64,000 bases of DNA from Mytilus californianus (Eukaryota), in contig NW_026262695.1 of NCBI RefSeq assembly GCF_021869535.1, positions 1,054,001 to 1,118,000 on the forward strand, given 5' to 3'. The first letter of the stretch is position 1; each line of letters opens with the position of its first letter. The notes beneath the pieces were generated by a model. The model did not search any database, had not been told where the DNA came from, and worked only from the letters and a program-made list of their open reading frames with translations. This document shows positions 40,424 to 62,624 of the stretch, one piece after another. The translations under genes and the position numbers were made by a program.

Positions 40424-40659
40424 NNNNNNNNNNNNNNNNNNNNNNNNNNNNNNNNNNNNNNNNNNNNNNNNNNNNNNNNNNNNNNNNNNNNNNNNNNNNN
40501 NNNNNNNNNNNNNNNNNNNNNNNNNNNNNNNNNNNNNNNNNNNNNNNNNNNNNNNNNNNNNNNNNNNNNNNNNNNNNNNNNNNNNNNNNNNNNNNNNNNN
40601 NNNNNNNNNNNNNNNNNNNNNNNNNNNNNNNNNNNNNNNNNNNNNNNNNNNNNNNNNNN
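40424..40659. other. Assembly gap (236 N) flanked by (GAT/GAC)n microsatellite
   Basis: Run of N with gatgacgac on both sides. Confidence 0.98.
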
Positions 40660-47091: not shown

Positions 47092-49691
47092 TAGTATAGG
47101 TATTCTATCTAGTCCTTCCTGTAGCTCGGTGAATGTGATGAATATTTTCAACTCTACTCCTCGACGTAGACGCAGTCATGGTCATCGTCATTATATATCA
47201 CCTACTTTGCATGATGTCTCTATTAATGACTTGCTGCCATCTATACAAAAGCCGTTAGGTATTCATCACATTCGCACGAAACTGTATTCATTACCCCTTT
47301 CAAAACTTCATTCTCTGTTCAATTTATGTTTGGAAACCACGGTTACAAACCCTCATCCAAACCAATACAAACTTACCGCTATTATTTCGGATATTGCAAG
47401 TCACAGACTTTTCAAACCAGTTCGCATTGGAAAAGATGAAAAAGAGAAAAGATCTTTTCTTAAACTTTCCTTTGCCAACAAAGGTCTGGATGGCGTCAAC
47501 TTAGGCAATATCCGTCATCATAATTTAGTTCAGTCGAAAATACCTCCTATTTTAAAGATCAGTCTGTACCAATAATTTCTTATACCTATACCAAACCAAT
47601 TGCAACTAAAATTTTCAATTACAAACACGTTTTGCAGGATCTCAACATTGACGACTTCAAGTCTAAACCTCCTGATTGCACCTGTGCTAGGTCCCAATTC
47701 ACATATAATCCGGCTGGCCACGTTATTACCGGAGACCTCAACATTGTCGATAACACTTCCCTGCGAAATTTGTTATCCAAAGGTCCGAAATATCGTGAGC
47801 CTAAATCCATCAATTGGAAATACAACTTAAAAATACTGATGGATTCAGTCGAGGATTATGCCAGGCAATGGGCTATACGCGAGAAAGAAGACATAGATAC
47901 TCTTTCCGAATGGATTAAGGCTGTGAGGTCGTTAATACAAATCCGAATTAAGAAACTAAATGGGCATATCAATACCCACGCTACATCAATTTTTAAAGAC
48001 CCAAATGTTGCAAAACACTTGTCCTACCTCCATGACAAATATGTTGTTGTCCCCGCAGATAAAGCCCCAAACAACATCGTTTTTGTGTGTAAATATCATT
48101 ACATAAACTGCTTGATAAATGAATTAGGTATTGACAATTCACTTCGAAACTCAACATATACCCTCACGACACTTACCAAAGAGGAAATCCTAGATAATCA
48201 TAGGTCTGTTCTATGTTCCTTTGAAATTTCAACCAAAGACGAAGAACTGGATCTTCCATCACTGTATTGGATACCTAAACTACATAAGTGTCCTTACAAA
48301 CAACGGTATATTGCTGGGTCTTCCAAGTGCTTCACGAAACCTCTTTCTAAATTATTAACATCTATTTTATCAGCAATCAAAGCAGGGCTCCAAAGTTATT
48401 GTGAAACTGCCTATTCTTGAGGTGGCGTGAATCAGATGTGGATACTAAAAAATTCCAAAGATCTTTTAGAGTACATACAATCTAAGACTCTCTCATCTTG
48501 CAATAGTATTAAAACATTTGACTTTTCTACACTTTACACAAGTATTCCCCATTCCAAACTAAAAGACAAATTGAAAGAGTTGGTATTACTTTGTTTCATT
48601 AAAAAGAATGGCGAACGTAAATACAAGTATCTTGTCTTGGGGAGGGATAAATCCTACTTTGTAAAGAATCACTCTGATTCAAACAAAAAATTCTCTGAAA
48701 CTGACATTATCAAGATGCTTGATTTCTTGATTGACAACATATTTGTTACGTTTGGAGGACATGTTTTTCAACAGACTGTCGGAATTCCAATGGGAACCAA
48801 CTGTGCCCCTCTTCTTGCCGACTTGTTTCTTTATTATTATGAGGCTGACTTCATACAGGAGCTTCTTAGGAAGAGAGATAAGAAGTTAGCAATATCCTTT
48901 AACTCTACGTTCCGCTATATAGATGATGTTCTCTCACTAAATAATACAAAATTTGGTGACTATGTTGAACGAATCTATCCCATCGAACTAGAGATAAAGG
49001 ATACTACAGATACAGTTAAGTCTGCCTCATATCTTGACTTCAGCAAGAAATTGACAATGAAGGTCGGTTGAAAACAAAACTTTACGACAAAAGAGATTAT
49101 TTCAGCTTCCCAATTGTGAACTTTCCATTTCTATGTAGCAACATTCCAGCAGCGCCTGCATACGGAGTATATATCTCCAAATTGATACGATATTCCCGGG
49201 CTTGTGTTTCCTATCATGATTTCCTTGATAGAGGATTGCTGCTCACAAGGAAGCTATTAAACCAAGAGTTCCAAATGGTGAAGTTGAAGTCATCCCTTCG
49301 TAAATTTTACGGACGCCATCACGAGTTGGTTGACCGTTATGGAATAACCGTTTCACAGATGATATCGGATATGTTCCTTATGTCGTAACTACAATACCCT
49401 TCCCTTTTCACGAATGTGACTTACCGAATTAGACTATTACCGGATTTGTAATAACATAAGCAACTCGACGGGTGCCACATGTGGAGCAGGATCTTCTTAC
49501 CCTTCCAGAGCACCTGAGATCACCCCCAGATTTTGGTGGGGTTCGTGTTGCTTGGTCTTTAGTTTTCTATGTTGTGTCATCTGTACTATTATTTGTCTGT
49601 TTGTCTTTTTTTTTTTGGCCATGACGTTGTCAGTTTGTTTTCGATCTATGAGTTTGACTGTCCCTCTGGTATCTTTCGTCTCTCTTTTTTT
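47092..49691 (+). mobile_element. 5'-truncated Penelope-like retrotransposon (Naiad-type RT), inactivated, in intron 2 of gene 2
   Basis: CxC..PAGHVITGDL..KGPKYREP linker; RT motifs DFSTLYTSIPH, GIPMGTNCAPLLADLFL and RYIDD; C-terminal KLYDKRD..AYGVYIS..RYSRAC. It has one TGA, frameshifts and a T-rich 3' end, with TTTCGTA at 47085 and 49692 as a putative target duplication. Confidence 0.88.
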
Positions 49692-54739: not shown

Positions 54740-55693
54740 TCAGATCAAAAATGTTCGAAAGCCAAAACAAATACAAAGTTGAAGAACATTAAGGACCAAA
54801 AGTTCCAAAGGGTTGTGCCAAATACGACTAAGGTTATATGCCTTGGATAAGAAAATCCTTAGAATTTAGAATAATTCATACTTTTGCAAACAGTAAATTT
54901 ATAAAAATGACCATATAATAGATAAACATGTTAACACCGAAGTGGTGACTTACTCTAGAATAAAAACGAATACGTAAAACAACCTAAATCAGCACATAAA
55001 AAAGGCACAGCCGAACAACGTATTATATGTTATCCGAAGAGATCGACGCACAATATCAAACTCGCACCACTCAAAAAAGAAAAGAAATTTAACAAACTCG
55101 AAGAAATGTGTTTAATCATTAAATTGGTTTCTTCTTCTCGGAGCACCTGTGTCACACCGAGACAGAACTTGCACCACTCGAGAAACAAATACTACAAACT
55201 CACACCACTGAAGAAATGTTTTAAATCATCATAGAGTTGTAGATTGTCTTCTCTTAGTTATTCCCTCCGTTCTTTGGGCGCCCGTATCACACAGAGACAG
55301 AACTTGACTCGCAACATTCGAAAAAAAATACTACGAACTAGCACCATGAGAAATGTTTTAATTATCAGTTTTCTAGGTTGTTTCTTCTTCTTTAAGTTAT
55401 TTCCTCCATTCTAGGAGCACCCGTGTAACATCGAGACATAAGCTACTAATTTGACATTAAAACTCTTATGGAAGAAGAGCTGACAAACTAATAACATAAT
55501 GCATCAGTGCATAAAAACAGTTTGAGAAACACGAACCCAAGCATTGTATCGCCATAAACATTTCAAGTAGTCTTCAAGCCGGTTTTTTTCTAGTTTGTTC
55601 ATAATAGTTAATAGGATGATGTAGTATGAGTGCCAATGAGACAACTCTCCATCCAAGTCAAAATTTGTAAAAGTAAACCATAAATTTATATTT

Positions 55694-58600
55694 CGAGGGT
55701 TCAGAGCAAAAAGGTGCTATCTGCATTTTTCCACTTTTCTTACATTTTCATATAAAACTATGCAAAAAGATCAACTCTATATTGTATAAAAATATCTAAT
55801 ATGTATTTATAATAATTAAACTAATAATGTTAATTAACATAAGGGGCTATCTGCAAATAAAAGAAACCATAAGAGCAAAAGGGTGCTATCTGCAATCCAT
55901 GTAGAGCAAAAAGGTGCTATCTGACAAATAGCACCTTTTTGCCCTCAGTAACTGATCAAATATAAGATAAGAAAAAGCCATGTGTTATTAATTTTATTAC
56001 TTAACATCCTATTTTCTACATGATGCTGATGTATAACATATGTGTATGAATGTGTATTCATTGAGGAAAACAGAATAACATTAAAGACAAAGAAAATTAA
56101 ATTATAAAGGTAAGTAATTAACTATAATTACAATTTAAAAAAAAAAATGATAATTTTTCAATTTTATTTGCGTAAATACAATTAAATTCATTAGATTATG
56201 ACACCAAAAATACCTTTAAACAAAAGCAAAGCAAATCATTGCAGAATATGTTGAGGGTCTACATGGGTGTGTTGATAAAATAACAGTTAAGTACTTGAAT
56301 TATATTCTGTTTATCATGAAATAAAAAATTTCAAACTCATTTTAGTATTATTTTAGAAGGAAATATGATATCCTTCTTTTGAATTGAATATACAGTAACC
56401 TCTTGAATCAAAATATAGCGATAGACTGGGTGTCTACAGAAGTATTCAATTCATGTTGTGATACTTTTGGACTGATAGCATAAAATAGGTCTGAATAAAA
56501 AATTAAAAAAAAAAGTGAAAATATTTCAATTTTTCAGATGGATGGCGAGGAGGAATGGTCAGACTGGTCAGACACTGACCTGCTGAAAATTCACAACTAT
56601 TATGAATTAAATGGTGGACAATCTACAAGTGAACCACATCATACAACAAGTGCCAGTCAAAATCAACATACTAAGAGCCCTGGAAATGGTGACAATGAAT
56701 CAAACCATTGCGTTTCTGAAGAGTCTGAAAGTGGACCATCAAATATTTCAAGTGAGCAATCATCAAGTACAATCATAGACAGGCCAAGTCAGCATGATGA
56801 CATCCCTGGGAATGGTAGATATGAAACCAATGCATGTCGTTCTAATACATCAGAAATAGAACTATCCAGTACTTTAACAGACCAATCATCAGCTAATACT
56901 ATAAGGAATATAAGTGGTGAAAATCAAGATGAAAATATGCAGATTGGATCAGAAAGTACACAAGTACAGCATGAATATGTTCAGTCAAAACACCAAAGCG
57001 TACTTCCAAATAATAAAACGACACCAGAGACTTCTGAACATCGAACTTTAGCTGGTTATACCTCTAATGATTCATCAAATGATGATGCACCACTCATAAC
57101 GCTGACTAAAAACAAACATAGGCTATAGAAACAAGATGCTTTGAGAAAAAGTGCTTTGAAAAGGCTGTTGAATGCTAAACGTTATATAAACAATGTTCGT
57201 GATAAACGTACAAAAGCAAGCAACATGACACCAGTACCAAGAAAAAAGCTTTACTATTTCCGTAAAAGACAAATCCCAATGAAACAGACACCTATGCCGA
57301 CAAGTGATTTGTCTGATGATTCAGGAGATGAACTGTATCAACCAAGTAAAAAGGATCTTCAATCTCCAGACTCAGATATGACATCTGAAAGGGACTCTGT
57401 AAGTGAACCAGAATCTTTATCCAGTATACAGTTGGTAAAACCGAAGCAAAGCCATCGGGACAAAAATTGGAAAAGAAAAGGTAAAAGTTTAAAAAAGAAG
57501 TTTGAAAAGCAGAGGAAAATTATACATGCAACTAGCTCGCAGAGGCACAGATCAGGACCCTGGAAAATTAAAGAAAAAGAAAGTAATGCAGAAGCAAATA
57601 GAACAAACTTAACAGAAACAGAAGCCATCAGATTAAGCCAAAAGGCAGCAATGAATAGAACGATCGAATGTCCAAATCCTCAGGGAAACGCTGGTTGATC
57701 ACATGTCACGTGAGGATTACCACTATAAGAGGTTCATATCGTTTGACCATGAAACAACTGTTGAGGGACAAAATCAAAAATTTGATAGTCTACTGCAAGA
57801 TTGTAGTATTGATGGGCATTGGAACAATGAACTTGCTGACTTCATGCCTTTGGCCTTAGCTAATATGTACAACAGACCATTAAGGATATATTCAAGTATG
57901 GTGTCAAATTCAGTTTATGACATTATTCCTGACTTACAAGACACTGAGCATTCTCAGGAGGATATCAAAGTTGCTTTAATTGCCATAACAGGTCAGGAGC
58001 ATTATGATGCAGTATGTCATTTGGATGAAGTTCTTGAAAGAACCTCTCAAGCAGATCAATCTACAATAGGTGATTGTAGTCCACCGGTTATGAATAATGT
58101 GCGAACACCTATGACGAATAAAAGGAAAAGAAGTACTCCAATAACACCGAGGAAACGTGCAAACTATAAAAGTCCGGTCAAGAAACCACTTTCGAAAAAA
58201 AAAAAAGAATCAAGAAGTTTGGAAAAGAAATGTAAGGCAATTTAATAGAGTACATGGTTTACCTTATACTGGTCTAACAGGAAAAGAACAAGCAAAGAAA
58301 AAGATGCAATATCGTGACTGTTCAAAATGTAAATTCCAATGTTCTTTAAAGATAAAGGAACAAGCAGGGGATATTGTCACCACTTATTATCAGTTGGGAT
58401 CATATGAGAAGCAAAGAAACTTTATTTGCCAACATGTAGAGCAAACTAAGGCCAAAAGATGTACCACAAATAGAAAAGAAAATTCCAACACATATTTTTT
58501 AACTACAGACGGGAAATTGAGCGAGTTTGTAAAGCTTTCTTTCTGGGAATACTTCATGTCAGCAAAAAAAACAGTAGAATATTCCTTGAAAAAGAAAGAG

Positions 58601-60695
58601 CATGGAGTATTTGTTGGCCGTGATAATCGCGGAAAAAAACCCATCCATAAACCGAACTCCAGAAGGTGATAGGCATTTTATTAGGGAACACATACAATCA
58701 TTTCCAACGGTATCATCACACTATACACGAAAGGACTCAAACCGTCAATATCTTACCTCAAACCTGTCAGTACAAAAGATGCACCAACTTTATGAAAAAG
58801 AATGTCAAAGGAAAGAAAAAAAACCATGTAAAATAAATGTATATAGTGATACTTTCTGTAACGAGTTTAACCTGGCATTTCATAAACCAAAAAAGGACCA
58901 GTGTTCAACATGTACTATCTATTATGAGAAGAAACAAAGAGGTGAAATAACAAAGGAAGACGAAGAACAATTTCAAGAACACCAAACGAAGAAATAGAAA
59001 TCAAGAGAAGAAAAAAGACTCGACAATTGCAAGGAAAGAGCAAAGACAGATAGATCTTTCGCTGCAGTTACCTTCGACTTGGAAGCAGTGCTGCCATCAC
59101 CCTGTAGCATGGTTGGGGATCTTTTTTATAAAAGATGACTGTCAACATACAACCTGTCATTCTATTCACTTGGGGATAGTAAAGGCACATGTTATTTGTG
59201 GGACGAGACGAATGGCGGACATTGACAAGTGACATTGGATCTTGCATACTGATGCACATCAACTCAATAGCGGAAAAAAATACCGCTGTTGAAGAAATTA
59301 CATACTTTTCAGATACTTGTGGTGGTCAAAACAGGAACCAGTTTGTGGCCTCTGCATTGCTGTATGCCTTACATTTTCATTCAAACTTAAAAGCAATTAA
59401 TCACAAGTTTTTTGAAAGGGGTCATTCGGAAATGGAAGCCGACTCCATACACTCGTCAGTGGAGAGAGCAAAAAAAGTACAAAGGTATACCATCCGTCAT
59501 AGTGGGACACTGTCGTGTCAATGGCGAGGAAGAGAAATCCTTATATAGTTATTCCAGTAAACTATAGAGATTTTTATGACATAAAAGACTTAAAAACCGA
59601 CTTTAACATCAATTTGAAAAGAACGGAGTCGGGAGAAACAATAAATTGGCTGAAAGTCAAGTGGATTCGGGTAACGAAAGAAAATCCAGGAAATGTATTT
59701 TTTAACAACGGCTTTGATCCTGAGAATTTTATGGAAGCTAAGTTCCAGTCAAGTAGTTAAAGAGGAAGAAAAAAGAAGACTGGAAATATTAAACTGTCAC
59801 CTTTGTATGAGTTTAAACTACAAATTTCTGCTGCAAAGAAAGCAGATCTCCTATCATTGTTCAAGAGCGGGGTTATCCCAACTACATATCACTCGTACTA
59901 TGAAAGTCTTCCGGTTGGAAAATTAGTGAAGGACACCTTGCCAGAGCCAGACATTACAGAAGAAGATTTAATAGACAACATTTAATTCAAATCAAAAGTT
60001 TAATGTTGTATCCTTGTAACAAATGATAAATCATGTTCTATTCAGTTTTGTTTTTAATTACAAAAAGCCGACCGACAAAAGGTACCAGAAAAAAATCTCT
60101 GAATGCTCATACTATTGTCAGGTCAATGTCATACAAAATCTAAATAAAAAATCAACATTATTCATCAAATTTAACTGACGAAACTATACTGTTAAAATCT
60201 TAAATGAAATACAGAATAAACCAAACACAATTTTATTCACTTTTTTTTTGCTTGTACTGACTGTAGAACAGGGCATATTTTATTACAAATTAGTGAAACA
60301 CTTCCGTCTGTATAAATATAATCCAAAAAATTGTCAAAAACCTAACTTAAGCAATAATAGATTGATAATATTTAAAACACTAACATGATTAAACAGAAAA
60401 AATGTTGAGCAAAAAGGTGCTATATGGCAGATAGCACCTTTTTGCTCTAAATTTTTGTCACCTTTGTCAATAGGCAAAAAGGGGCTATCTGCATTGACCT
60501 ACTTTTATCCTATTTATACTTACTTAATCATTCCAAACTTTTGACAAATTACACACACCAACATTATCTCATATTTGACCAATTTATAGATCATATAAAT
60601 GACAAACTGATTTTTGATAATTTGATAAACCTTTAAACTCGATTTTCTCAAAACTATGAAATATGCAGATAACCCCTTTTTGCTCTGAACCCTCG
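55694..60695 (+). mobile_element. Full-length Sola1-type DNA transposon (5,002 bp), coding region decayed
   Basis: 33-bp TIR CGAGGGTTCAGAGCAAAAAGGtGcTATCTGCAT with 2 mismatches, and ATTT duplicated at 55690 and 60696. Transposase motifs: HIQSFP..SHY.R, KPKKDQC..C, FDLEAVLP, FSDTCGGQNRN, FFERGHSEMEADSIHSSVE. Confidence 0.88.
56538..59985 (+). pseudogene. Disrupted transposon ORF: acidic low-complexity N-terminus, OTU-like domain, Sola1 DDD transposase
   Basis: Consecutive overlapping ORF pieces (56538, 57141, 57703, 58157, 58602, 59189, 59515, 59803) are joined by stops and frameshifts. The acceptor ttttcag lies directly before the ATG at 56538. Confidence 0.8.
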
Positions 60696-62624
60696 ATTTG
60701 TTCTTTGAAAGTATAAAGTTAATTTTTTTACATGATTAAGAATGACTATTCAATTACAATAAAGTGTCCATAATATTCGAAGTCCAGATTTGACCTAAAG
60801 TACTGCAACTACTTTAAAAGTTTAATTAATAAGCTTGACCCTACATTATCCTTGATTGATTTATGTTTGTTACAACGATATTAACGTATATTAGTTGTAA
60901 AATCACTGCCACAATCTTTAGTAGAGACATTGAATATTTTAAACTGTTCGAACATTTCATCAGTGTGTTTGTTTACGTTATTGTAGCGTAGTCTTATGTA
61001 ATCTGTCAAAATCGATTAAAAGACCGAAGAAACAATTTGTTATGACCAGTTTATATTTCTGTTTTTATACAAAATGGCTTGTTCCCTTTTTAAAATGATT
61101 TTATTGTAAGAGAACCAAGTGTGAAGTTGTCTAACACTCTTGTTTTGCCACGTACGGTAAAGTTTAAATGTATATATAATATTCAAGTATTCAATAAAAT
61201 GTGAGTATTGAGTGACAGGACATTCTTATAAATTCTGCATTGATAAATCTAGAAATCATTAAGGAATTAATTCAAAATGGATCTAAGGAGCATTTGGCTT
61301 TACAATAAAGGTCCCTTTGTTAATGTAAATAGATAAAGGAAGATGTGGTGTCAATGAGTGTCAATGAGACAACTCTCCATCCAAGTCACAATTATAAAAG
61401 TAAAGAGCCTAGGCTCACACCGAACTCTGCATGTATTCGAATATTTATACATCCTTGGACTCTCATTGTTTGGGTTAAAGCGTTCCTAGTGAAATTAAAT
61501 ACAGAAAAGCGCATCGGACGGACAAAATTTTTAAATGTTTAGTGCAAAATCTTTATTATCATGCTGTGGTTTCTTTTGTGTGCGACATATGCGTATGTAA
61601 TAAAGGGCACACTGTTGTCGTCTTTCTATCAAATAAAGTTCTCAACTGCATCCATCAGTAACCTTAAGTTTTTGTTTATTACATGTTCATTATCCACTAT
61701 GCTGAGGTTTCCTCTAATAACATAATACGTAGGACTGTATTTGTCTGTGGATGAGATTAAAAAAAGTTTTGAAGTTTAAAATTTATATTCTTAAGAACAT
61801 TTGTTCTTTTAACGCTTCTGAGAGAGAAAACTTGGATGCAATGGGTGTTTTGTAGGAACGTGATATATCTAAAGTGAGCAAGTATTGATTCTGGTCAACT
61901 TTTGTGGAAAATATTAACAGTATGTATAGCATCAGTACCGTTATGTTAAATATATAAGTAAATGCTACTAAACTATAAGTTTTTTGAAGTCGTTTATGTC
62001 GAAGGATGAAATAGCCGTGAATATCACTGTATGTGTGTGTGTTTATTCCACATTGGCTAGATGTATCGGGGAATGGTTGATATATCACAAAACATGTTTA
62101 ACCCCGCTGAATTTTTGTATCTTTCCCAAGGTCAGGAACCTCTAGAATTTGTTAGTCTTGTGTGTATTTTTAAATTTTGGTTCATTTTTATGTTTCGTAG
62201 TTTAGTGTGGCGTCCTTTTCGTTGAACTAATATACATTATTGATTAGGGGTCAGCTTTAACCCGACTCCGGCAGTAGGATTGTCGCACTATTTAAAGACC
62301 ATTGTTTTTTTGTTCTTTGAAAGGTTTGTTATCACTTTAAAAGATTCCTTGTTTCTATTCTCTCTTCTATTGTATTAACAGTATCCTTAACCATATTTTG
62401 CACAACTTTTCGGAGTTTTTGTTTTTCAGTGCTTGTTAACGTAGCATTTGATTTGATCACTTAAATGTCTAGATTAGAACGTCACAGATGCGCCTTATAT
62501 AGACGGCGTGTTTCGTTGAAGTATTGTTGTTCAATAAAACCATATACATATTTTGTAAATTGTTTTAAAATAAACTTTGTACATTGTTATGTCTCAAATA
62601 AACTTTATATATTGTGATGTTAAA

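What the first reader, a model, noticed from the sequence alone, without database searches (positions are those of the whole stretch)
55694..60695. Sola1 transposon whose transposase ORF carries an OTU deubiquitinase-like domain
Seen: between a disordered acidic N-terminus and the Sola1 transposase, 57662-58020 reads LRETLVDHM..Y..FI...DGHWNNELADFMPLALANMYNRPLRIYSS...IKVALIAITGQEHYDAV. Known: this matches the C-terminal two-thirds of OTU cysteine proteases (LR..V..M helix, G.W...E/D..ALA..., His-box HY). Inference: the ancestral element encoded a single protein of roughly 1,150 aa fusing OTU and transposase, which might strip ubiquitin to protect the transposase or act on chromatin. Protease cargo is known in other transposon groups (e.g. 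Helitrons, Zisuptons), but I do not know of a described OTU-Sola1 fusion. In this copy the catalytic Cys box appears lost at the frameshift near 57660.
Basis: partly seen in the sequence, partly recalled or inferred. Interest (0 to 1): 0.78.

Follow-up and report, generated by a model that had tools for sequence, protein, structure and literature searches.

The report
Dead Sola1 transposon with OTU protease
This is a broken copy of a mussel cut-and-paste (Sola1) transposon whose transposase gene once began with a ubiquitin-removing OTU protease domain, and many intact relatives show the fusion is a conserved, apparently undescribed feature of a Sola1 branch.

Summary
Window 55694-60695 is a 5,002-bp transposon with 38-nt terminal inverted repeats and a perfect 4-bp target duplication ATTT/ATTT, the AWWT type that marks Sola1. 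Its decayed transposase matches the Sola1-1_AP reference core.

The segment at 57655-58056 is a real OTU remnant. On its own it scores weakly (Pfam E 0.04). A profile of its relatives hits OTUD3 and OTUD5 (E 2.5e-9, 4e-8), and its AlphaFold model (pLDDT 88) matches only OTU deubiquitinases.

The fusion is not peculiar to this copy. 70 database proteins carry both OTU and Sola1 transposase, and OTU is N-terminal in all of them. 35 are full-length single ORFs, median about 1,030 aa. Complete elements with related termini and AWWT duplications were recovered (L001, L003, L004, L005). The catalytic Cys (59/60) and His (68/69) are conserved.

This copy is dead. A roughly 130-nt deletion removed the Cys box, and there are also four frameshifts and four premature stops.

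OTU-transposase fusions are known in Ginger1 and Helitrons. I found none described for Sola1, so I rate it a new variant of a known kind. What the protease does for the transposon is inferred, not tested.

The parts
55690..55693 (.). Left target-site duplication ATTT
   Evidence: Identical to 60696-60699. Fits AWWT, described as the Sola1 hallmark in PMC3845634.
55694..55731 (+). Left terminal inverted repeat, starting CGAGGGTTCAGAGC
   Evidence: 39-nt inverted repeat, 92% complementary to the right end. Terminus CGAGGGTT is shared with L001 and L003, and the inner GGTGCTATCTGCA motif with L005.
55872..55945 (.). Left subterminal copies of the 23-nt TIR-internal motif AGAGCAAAAAGGTGCTATCTGCA, one pair forming a palindrome
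   Evidence: 5 copies in the window at <=3 mismatches against 0 expected; inverted pairs I11 and I12. Likely transposase-binding sites (inference).
56538..57125 (+). Acidic, Ser-rich N-terminal region of the decayed ORF (frame 0), ended by an in-frame stop at 57126
   Evidence: ORF list. No Pfam hit. DDAPLITL at 57081 parallels DDVPLINM near the N-terminus of P0185.
57129..57581 (+). Basic/Ser-rich pre-OTU region (frame 0)
   Evidence: 57327-57581 aligns with P0004 residues 4-83 (37% identity) and 57297-57377 with P0011 residues 18-44.
57582..57666 (+). Deletion junction and frame change (0 to 1) where the OTU N-terminal third with the DGNC Cys box is missing
   Evidence: About 72 residues of P0004 fall in 85 nt here. 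No Cys-box remnant in any forward frame. The alignment shows relatives with LL.SNGL.R..V..DGNCFF.A and the window with nothing.
57667..58014 (+). OTU domain remnant (C-terminal two thirds, frame 1); His box EHYD with His at 58000-58002 and Asp at 58006-58008
   Evidence: Pfam OTU E 0.04 for the piece alone; 164 homologues; family profile vs PDB gives OTUD3 at 2.5e-9; AF2 pLDDT 88 and the Foldseek top 50 are all OTU or OTU-like cysteine deubiquitinases.
58060..58242 (+). Basic linker resembling a nuclear localisation signal (KRKRSTPITPRKR, KKPLSKKKKE)
   Evidence: Translation. Linkers in relatives are poorly conserved, 23% pairwise identity. The NLS role is an inference.
58190..58639 (+). Transposase N-terminal part (frame 2) with the conserved C-x2-C-x3-C cluster (RDCSKCKFQC at 58313-58342)
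   Evidence: 50% identity to P0185 residues 438-588. The three Cys are conserved in >=93% of 124 Sola1 transposases.
58650..59216 (+). Transposase middle part (frame 0) with the first catalytic Asp (FDLE, D at 59076-59078); in-frame stops at 58995 and 59136
   Evidence: tblastn at 45-56% identity to relatives. This D is present in 124 of 124 proteins. Matches the FDLEKVL..P and CYMWDE blocks of Sola1-1_AP.
59231..59473 (+). Transposase catalytic core (frame 2): YFSDTCGGQNRN (D at 59312-59314) and ERGHSEMEADS (E at 59435, D at 59441)
   Evidence: Pfam DUF7869 E 0.0027. 56-63% identity to P0009 and P0185. Residues invariant in 123-124 of 124 proteins. Matches YSDNCGGQNRN and ERGHT of Sola1-1_AP.
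59476..59985 (+). Transposase C-terminal part (frame 1), premature stop at 59758, natural stop at 59983
   Evidence: tblastn to P0031, P0045, P0185 and P0011 at 36-48% identity; stops listed.
60398..60494 (.). Right subterminal copies of the TIR-internal motif (palindromic pair plus one more)
   Evidence: (I5, I9, I15).
60658..60695 (-). Right terminal inverted repeat
60696..60699 (.). Right target-site duplication ATTT

Best explanation
Window 55694-60695 is a non-autonomous, decayed copy of a Sola1 cut-and-paste DNA transposon. It belongs to a Sola1 branch, seen mostly in molluscs among the named sequences, whose single intron-less ORF of about 1,000-1,150 aa has five parts in order: a variable disordered N-terminus, an OTU cysteine-protease (deubiquitinase) domain, a basic linker, a Cys-cluster DNA-binding region, and the DDD/E RNase-H-like Sola1 catalytic core.

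Shown here: the element structure (TIRs, subterminal repeats, 4-bp AWWT duplication); Sola1 identity; the OTU fold and family; the in-frame fusion in 70 relatives; clade-wide conservation of the OTU catalytic Cys, His and Asp; and OTU conservation (35% pairwise identity) well above its flanks (20-23%).

Inferred: in active family members the OTU domain works as a deubiquitinase tethered to the transposase. It would either remove ubiquitin from the transposase itself to spare it from degradation, or remove it from chromatin or DNA-repair proteins at the excision or integration site.

This particular copy does nothing of the sort. A deletion of about 130 nt removed the catalytic Cys box, and four further frameshifts and four premature stops break the ORF. 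At most it could be moved in trans by an intact relative, because its ends are still about 92% matched.
For: Element: TIRs and TSD and repeated 23-nt motif.

Sola1: TSDs ATTT (window), ATAT (L001) and ATTT (L004) all fit AWWT (hallmark per PMC3845634). The core blocks FDLE.VL..P, YKR, CY.WDE, YSD.CGGQNRN and ERGH match Sola1-1_AP as printed in the supplement of PMC3985635, and do not match Sola2-1_HM. My hand count is about 50 of 115 identical. Pfam DUF7869 is hit by the window and, above cut-off, by relatives. D, D and E/D are invariant in 124 transposases and kept in the window.

OTU: Pfam OTU is above the gathering score in relatives (29-41 bits). Profile A1 vs PDB gives OTUD3 2.5e-9, OTUD5 4e-8 and Otu2 3.7e-7. 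AF2 models have pLDDT 88 (window piece) and 94 (P0185), with Foldseek hits only to OTU or OTU-like cysteine deubiquitinases; TM up to 0.77, E 1.9e-8.

Fusion: the window is collinear with P0009, P0031, P0045, P0053, P0054 and P0185. 70 proteins have both domains, with OTU N-terminal in 70 of 70. L005 is a complete 4.3-kb element with a TIR homologous to the window's and an intact 1,032-aa ORF. L003 is a complete 6.08-kb element with an intact 1,100-aa ORF.

Selection: Cys 59/60, His 68/69, Asp 62/69; domain-wise identities.

Decay.
Against: The window's OTU piece alone is below Pfam's gathering score (14.9 vs 23.3 bits). The Sola1 assignment rests on TSD pattern and on a by-eye comparison with a printed reference core, because no Sola1 profile or Repbase sequence was available as a reference. 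No biochemical evidence exists for deubiquitinase activity or for any role in transposition. The closest named protein, P0001 from Mytilus coruscus, also starts after the Cys box. The gain/loss history of OTU within Sola1 is unresolved: FastTree support for the OTU clade is only 89-92, and there is one OTU-bearing outlier, P0271.
Confidence: 0.9

Rival explanations
1. In this family the OTU domain is not an enzyme but a ubiquitin-binding or scaffolding module, or it cleaves a different modifier such as ISG15 or NEDD8.
For: No activity data. Some cellular OTU proteins act non-catalytically (own knowledge, e.g. OTUB1). Foldseek also hits viral OTUs that cleave ISG15.
Against: Catalytic Cys is kept in 59/60, His in 68/69 and Asp in 62/69 of fused proteins that are often below 50% identical to each other. 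This pattern is expected for an active protease.
Confidence: 0.1
2. The OTU segment is a captured host-gene fragment or a nested insertion peculiar to this copy, not part of the ancestral transposase.
For: Transposons do capture host fragments. The window's ORF changes frame on both sides of the OTU piece.
Against: 70 relatives encode OTU and transposase in one ORF in the same order. The closest relative (L005, homologous TIR) has both in an intact 1,032-aa ORF. There are no extra TIRs or duplications around 57655-58056.
Confidence: 0.02
3. The element belongs to another DDE superfamily (for example Sola2, PIF/Harbinger or piggyBac-like) and not to Sola1.
For: No curated Sola1 profile was available. 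Pfam calls the core only DUF7869.
Against: The 4-bp AWWT duplications in three independent complete elements and the block-by-block match to Sola1-1_AP, but not to Sola2-1_HM, in the PMC3985635 supplement. Bivalve Sola1 elements are reported to average 5.4 kb (PMC10294476).
Confidence: 0.04
4. The OTU resemblance is a chance similarity in a low-complexity spacer.
For: The single-sequence Pfam hit is sub-threshold (E 0.04), and the PDB sequence hit to OTUD5 is only E 0.6.
Against:: deep homologue set, significant profile hits, and a confident model matching only OTU folds.
Confidence: 0.01

Closest known systems
Sola1 DNA transposons (Sola superfamily; Bao et al. 2009, as cited in PMC3845634, PMC4455052 and PMC3985635)
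   Same: TIR-bounded cut-and-paste element; 4-bp AWWT target duplication; DDD/E RNase-H-like transposase with the FDLE, SD.CGGQNRN and ERGH blocks; about 5 kb, as reported for bivalve Sola1 (PMC10294476).
   Different: The transposase carries an N-terminal OTU protease domain. The reference insect-type Sola1 transposases are shorter (630 aa in PMC3845634; 580-800 aa for most insect hits). In the transposase tree they form a separate clade of 58 rows with no OTU.
Ginger1 transposases with OTU or Ulp1 domains (PMC2836005)
   Same: A DDE transposase fused in one ORF to an OTU cysteine protease; found in invertebrates including a mollusc (Aplysia).
   Different: A different transposase superfamily (Gypsy-integrase-like), and OTU sits at the C-terminus. 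Here it is N-terminal to a Sola1 core.
Helitron/Helentron RepHel proteins with OTU-like protease (PMC6431247, PMC11417382)
   Same: Recurrent OTU cargo in a DNA transposon, usually upstream of the transposition enzyme; role unknown.
   Different: Rolling-circle Rep/helicase elements, not cut-and-paste. In Helitrons the domain is often fragmentary and is thought dispensable (PMC11417382). In the Sola1 branch the catalytic triad is almost always kept.
OTU-fused Mutator (MULE) transposases noted elsewhere in this genome (AI notes s1-330639, s1-282002, s1-282028; unchecked)
   Same: Same genome, with OTU at the N-terminus of a cut-and-paste transposase.
   Different: A MULE transposase with a multi-exon gene. 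I did not compare the two OTU domains.
Cellular OTUD-type deubiquitinases (OTUD1, OTUD3, OTUD5/DUBA, yeast Otu2)
   Same: Same fold and catalytic Cys, His and Asp. These are the best sequence-profile and structure matches.
   Different: Only 13-21% identity over the structural alignment. The transposon domain is fused to a transposase and has its own conserved LL.SNGL.R lead-in helix.

Membership tests
Sola1 (Sola superfamily) | 4-bp target-site duplication | tested here: met
   ATTT at 55690-55693 and at 60696-60699. Relatives L001 (ATAT/ATAT) and L004 (ATTT/ATTT) also have 4-bp duplications.
Sola1 (Sola superfamily) | Target preference AWWT | tested here: met
   ATTT, ATAT, ATTT, and the one-sided AAAT of L003 and L005, all fit AWWT. 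The hallmark is stated in PMC3845634. Only a handful of insertions were seen.
Sola1 (Sola superfamily) | Sola1-type DDD transposase core | tested here: met
   By-eye comparison with Sola1-1_AP in supplement file 5 of PMC3985635: about 50 of 115 identical, with all signature blocks shared, while the Sola2-1_HM blocks (GDFAENY, TDGCAGQYKN, FATSHG) differ. Invariant D, D and E/D in 124 relatives are kept in the window.
Sola1 (Sola superfamily) | Terminal inverted repeats | tested here: met
   38 nt, 3 mismatches.
Sola1 (Sola superfamily) | Intact, potentially active transposase | tested here: not met
   Four frameshifts within the OTU-transposase part, one deletion with frame change, and premature stops at 57126, 58995, 59136 and 59758.
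OTU cysteine proteases (Pfam PF02338) | Profile match above the curated cut-off | tested here: inconclusive
   The window piece scores 14.9 bits against a cut-off of 23.3. Its full-length relatives score 29-41 bits, and the family profile hits OTUD3 at 2.5e-9.
OTU cysteine proteases (Pfam PF02338) | OTU fold | tested here: met
   Window piece: pLDDT 88, and the Foldseek top 50 are all OTU or OTU-like cysteine deubiquitinases at probability up to 1.00. Relative P0185: pLDDT 94, TM up to 0.77.
OTU cysteine proteases (Pfam PF02338) | Catalytic Cys box (DGNC) | tested here: not met
   Absent from the window in every forward frame. Present in 59 of 60 fused relatives that cover the position.
OTU cysteine proteases (Pfam PF02338) | Catalytic His and Asp (H-x-D) | tested here: met
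   EHYD at 57997-58008. His in 68/69 and Asp in 62/69 relatives.
OTU cysteine proteases (Pfam PF02338) | Deubiquitinase activity | not testable with these tools
   Needs enzyme assays.
Protease-transposase fusion proteins (as in Ginger1-OTU) | Protease and transposase in one uninterrupted ORF inside the element | tested here: met
   Met in relatives: L003 (1,100 aa) and L005 (1,032 aa) lie within TIR-bounded elements, and 35 full-length fusions were found. In the window the ORF is broken but collinear with them.

The most novel reading that the evidence does not exclude
The OTU domain is an active, transposase-tethered deubiquitinase that the Sola1 branch needs for efficient transposition, either by stabilising the transposase or by editing ubiquitin marks on chromatin or repair factors at the break. 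There is OTU in Helitrons and Ginger1. Unchecked notes on this genome also report OTU in MULEs and an F-box gene in another Sola1 element. Taken together, this would mean that invertebrate DNA transposons have repeatedly and independently taken over the host ubiquitin system.
Probability: 0.35. Interest if true: 0.7.

Novelty: new variant of a known kind. Interest (0 to 1): 0.5.

Why it matters
Protease domains have turned up in several transposon superfamilies, but nobody has shown what they do. This Sola1 branch is a good test case. The fusion is in one intron-less ORF and the catalytic residues are almost always kept. Naturally intact elements with defined ends exist (L003, L005), so both enzyme assays and transposition assays are feasible. 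The finding adds a further superfamily to those already carrying OTU. It gives Pfam's DUF7869 a meaning, as the Sola1 catalytic core. It also shows that some 'bacterial' MAG proteins in public databases are really host transposon genes.

Tried and rejected
1. I looked for a Cys-box remnant in other frames. The frame-0 string PQGNAG at about 57681 looked tempting, but it overlaps the genuine frame-1 ILRETL reading, and the N-terminal HMM found nothing. Rejected.
2. I suspected an extra frame switch at 58474-58620, where frame 1 reads RVCKAFF. P0185 aligns continuously in frame 2 at 50% identity. Rejected as coincidence.
3. I considered TCGA as the duplication. Comparison with L001, L003 and L004 shows the element starts at CGAGGG and the duplication is ATTT.
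4. There is no second copy of the element in the window.
5. NCBIfam gave no hits for the fused proteins.
6. The primary Sola papers (Bao 2009; Yuan & Wessler 2011) are not held.
8. A computed alignment to Sola1-1_AP was left out, because that sequence exists only as printed text without a reference. I counted identities by eye.
9. The broken transposase was read through with X at each break, inside a script only, to place it in the tree.
10. OTU-less Sola1 proteins with long N-termini showed no other recognisable N-terminal domain.
Full report
**What is there**

Window 55694-60695 (+ strand) is a 5,002-bp element. It is bounded by 38-nt inverted repeats that start CGAGGGTTCAGAGC, with 3 mismatches between the arms. 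The four bases on each side are ATTT (55690-55693 and 60696-60699), a perfect 4-bp target-site duplication. A 23-nt motif from inside the repeat, AGAGCAAAAAGGTGCTATCTGCA, recurs five times near the two ends, against none expected by chance. Some copies form palindromic pairs. The window holds no second copy of the element. The surroundings are repeat-rich: reverse-transcriptase ORFs at 47632-49388 and a 139-bp tandem repeat at 55135-55438.

**The coding region**

On the + strand a decayed reading frame runs from the ATG at 56538 to the stop at 59983. It has five parts:
- an acidic, Ser-rich N-terminus (56538-57125, frame 0);
- a basic, Ser-rich stretch (57129-57581, frame 0);
- the OTU-like piece (57655-58056, frame 1);
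- a basic linker that looks like a nuclear localisation signal (58060-58242);
- a transposase split over frames 2, 0, 2 and 1 (58190-59982).

ILRETLVDHM is at 57676, DGHWNNELADFMPLALANMY at 57811 and GQEHYDAV at 57991.

**Is it Sola1?**

Pfam gives only a weak hit to DUF7869 for the piece at 59189-59545 (E 0.0027). Three lines of evidence support Sola1.

First, the 4-bp duplication fits AWWT, which PMC3845634 calls the hallmark of Sola1. Related complete elements that I fetched show ATAT/ATAT (L001) and ATTT/ATTT (L004). L003 and L005 run into the contig end on one side and show AAAT on the other.

Second, supplement file 5 of PMC3985635 prints the RNase-H-like core of the Repbase reference Sola1-1_AP. 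Its blocks FDLEKVL..P, YYKRK, CYMWDE, EIGTCLL, FYSDNCGGQNRN and FLERGHT line up with the window's FDLEAVL..P, FYKR, CYLWDE, DIGSCIL, YFSDTCGGQNRN and FFERGHS at 59061-59464. My hand count gives about 50 identities in 115 positions. The Sola2-1_HM core printed in the same file has different blocks. I did not compute this alignment, because the reference exists only as printed text.

Third, in an alignment of 124 related transposases the Asp of FDL, the Asp of SD.C.GQNRN, and the Glu and Asp of GH..ME.DS are present in 123-124 of 124. All are still present in the window.

Size also fits. Bivalve Sola1 elements average 5.4 kb (PMC10294476).

**Is the OTU piece real?**

Alone, the 134-aa piece scores below threshold: Pfam OTU E 0.04 at 14.9 bits against a cut-off of 23.3, and OTUD5 in the PDB at E 0.6. 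A full HMMER scan of 1.84 billion proteins found 164 relatives at E<=1e-3, the best being a Mytilus coruscus protein at 52% identity.

Long relatives carry Pfam OTU above the cut-off (29-41 bits) together with DUF7869. A profile of 20 family members hits OTUD3 (2.5e-9), OTUD5 (4e-8), Otu2 (3.7e-7) and OTUD1.

The AlphaFold model of the window piece has pLDDT 88. Its 50 best Foldseek matches are all OTU or OTU-like cysteine deubiquitinases. The full domain of the closest intact relative, P0185, models at pLDDT 94 and matches OTUD1, OTUD3, Otu2 and OTUD5 with TM up to 0.77 and E down to 1.9e-8.

**Is it one protein?**

Yes, in the family. tblastn shows the window is collinear, from OTU through linker to transposase, with P0009, P0031, P0045, P0053, P0054, P0011, P0184 and P0185. 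Among the 275 proteins gathered by the OTU search and by a transposase search, 70 have both domains, and OTU is N-terminal in all 70. Thirty-five have a complete OTU and at least 70% of the transposase.

These ORFs were called without introns on short contigs. Four of the five contigs I fetched hold whole elements:
- L003 is 6,079 bp with terminus CGAGGGTT and an intact 1,100-aa ORF.
- L005 is about 4.3 kb with an intact 1,032-aa ORF. Its TIR, CGATGGCGTAAAGCAGAAAGGTGCTATCTGCA, is clearly homologous to the window's.
- L001 is 6,429 bp with terminus CGAGGGTT, a 1,074-aa ORF and then a frameshift.
- L004 is 5,016 bp.

A nested insertion or a copy-specific capture is therefore excluded.

**Conservation**

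In the fused proteins the catalytic Cys is present in 59 of the 60 that cover the position. His is present in 68 of 69, and the Asp two residues later in 62 of 69. Mean pairwise identity is 35% in OTU and 47% in the transposase, against 23% in the linker and 20% in the N-terminus. So the OTU domain has been kept under constraint.

**Distribution**

In a FastTree of the transposase part (125 rows), 38 of the 39 OTU-bearing rows fall in one clade of 53 rows (support 89-92, not decisive). That clade includes oyster, pearl-oyster and mussel proteins, plus short gene models from abalone and clam. A well-supported sister clade of 58 rows (98) has no OTU; its named members are insect proteins.

One divergent OTU-bearing protein, P0271, lies outside the main clade. 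One gain with losses, or two gains, therefore cannot be told apart. The window's X-bridged translation groups with P0185 (98 support; 57% identity over 565 columns).

**State of this copy**

Relative P0004 aligns with residues 4-83 on 57327-57581 and residues 156-256 on 57667-57969. About 72 residues of the relative, including LL.SNGL.R..V..DGNC, therefore fall in only 85 nt here. An HMM of that part finds no trace in any forward frame.

That is a deletion of about 130 nt with a frame change. Further frame changes lie near 58180, 58645, 59220 and 59470-59524, and premature stops at 57126, 58995, 59136 and 59758. The copy cannot make either activity. It keeps the OTU His box and all the transposase catalytic residues, which suggests the decay is fairly recent.

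**Mechanism**

The following are shown: the architecture, the fold, the catalytic residues, and their conservation. It is inferred that in intact elements the OTU acts as a deubiquitinase carried by the transposase. The two most likely roles are protecting the transposase from ubiquitin-dependent degradation, and acting on ubiquitinated chromatin or repair proteins at the double-strand break. The second idea was already raised for Ginger1 (PMC2836005). Neither role is tested.

**Comparison with what is known**

OTU fused to a transposition enzyme is documented for Ginger1, where it is C-terminal (PMC2836005), and for Helitrons and Helentrons (PMC6431247, PMC11417382). Unchecked notes of this scan report OTU-MULE fusions and a Sola1 element with an F-box gene in the same genome, which those notes call the California mussel.

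Three full-text searches combining Sola or Sola1 with OTU found no description of an OTU-bearing Sola1. A search for the Pfam name DUF7869 found no paper at all. Public databases already hold such proteins under automatic names like 'OTU domain-containing protein'. I therefore rate it a new variant of a known kind, of moderate interest.

**Limits**

The Sola1 papers themselves were not available. The tree is a quick one.

Noticed in passing
window 59189-59545; relatives P0031, P0053, P0271 and others: Pfam's 'domain of unknown function' DUF7869 (PF25273) coincides with the Sola1 RNase-H-like catalytic core (the SD.CGGQNRN to ERGH region), so the DUF could be annotated as the Sola1 transposase core. 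No paper in the library mentions DUF7869.
   Followed up: partly
L001:1-6530 (GCA_040505915.1, JBEVXV010000567.1); P0006 and P0161: Proteins deposited as bacterial MAG genes (Sedimenticola sp. MES9881873.1; Candidatus Thiodiazotropha sp. MEW8546092.1 and P0161) are eukaryotic OTU-Sola1 transposon ORFs. L001 is a whole TIR-bounded element at 39.6% GC, so it is probably host (clam) DNA mis-binned into symbiont genomes.
   Followed up: partly
window 47632-49388 (+): Three consecutive ORFs (262, 214 and 106 aa) with reverse-transcriptase-like motifs (RYIDDVL), so a retrotransposon remnant lies upstream of the Sola1 element.
   Followed up: no
window 55135-55438: A 139-bp tandem repeat, 2.2 copies at 75% match, lies just upstream of the element's left end.
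   Followed up: no
window 40424-40659: A run of 236 N (assembly gap or masked), left untouched.
   Followed up: no
P0093 (1,471 aa): A protein with a long ankyrin-repeat array and a C-terminal OTU domain of the same subfamily as the transposon OTU (E 1.6e-6 to the window piece). It could be a cellular relative or donor of the captured domain, or another fusion.
   Followed up: no
L001, L003, L005 and the window ends: Each family has the same end design: a short shared terminus (CGAGGGTT or CGATGG) followed by a family-specific motif of about 20 nt that is repeated subterminally in both orientations. These are probably multiple transposase-binding sites.
   Followed up: partly
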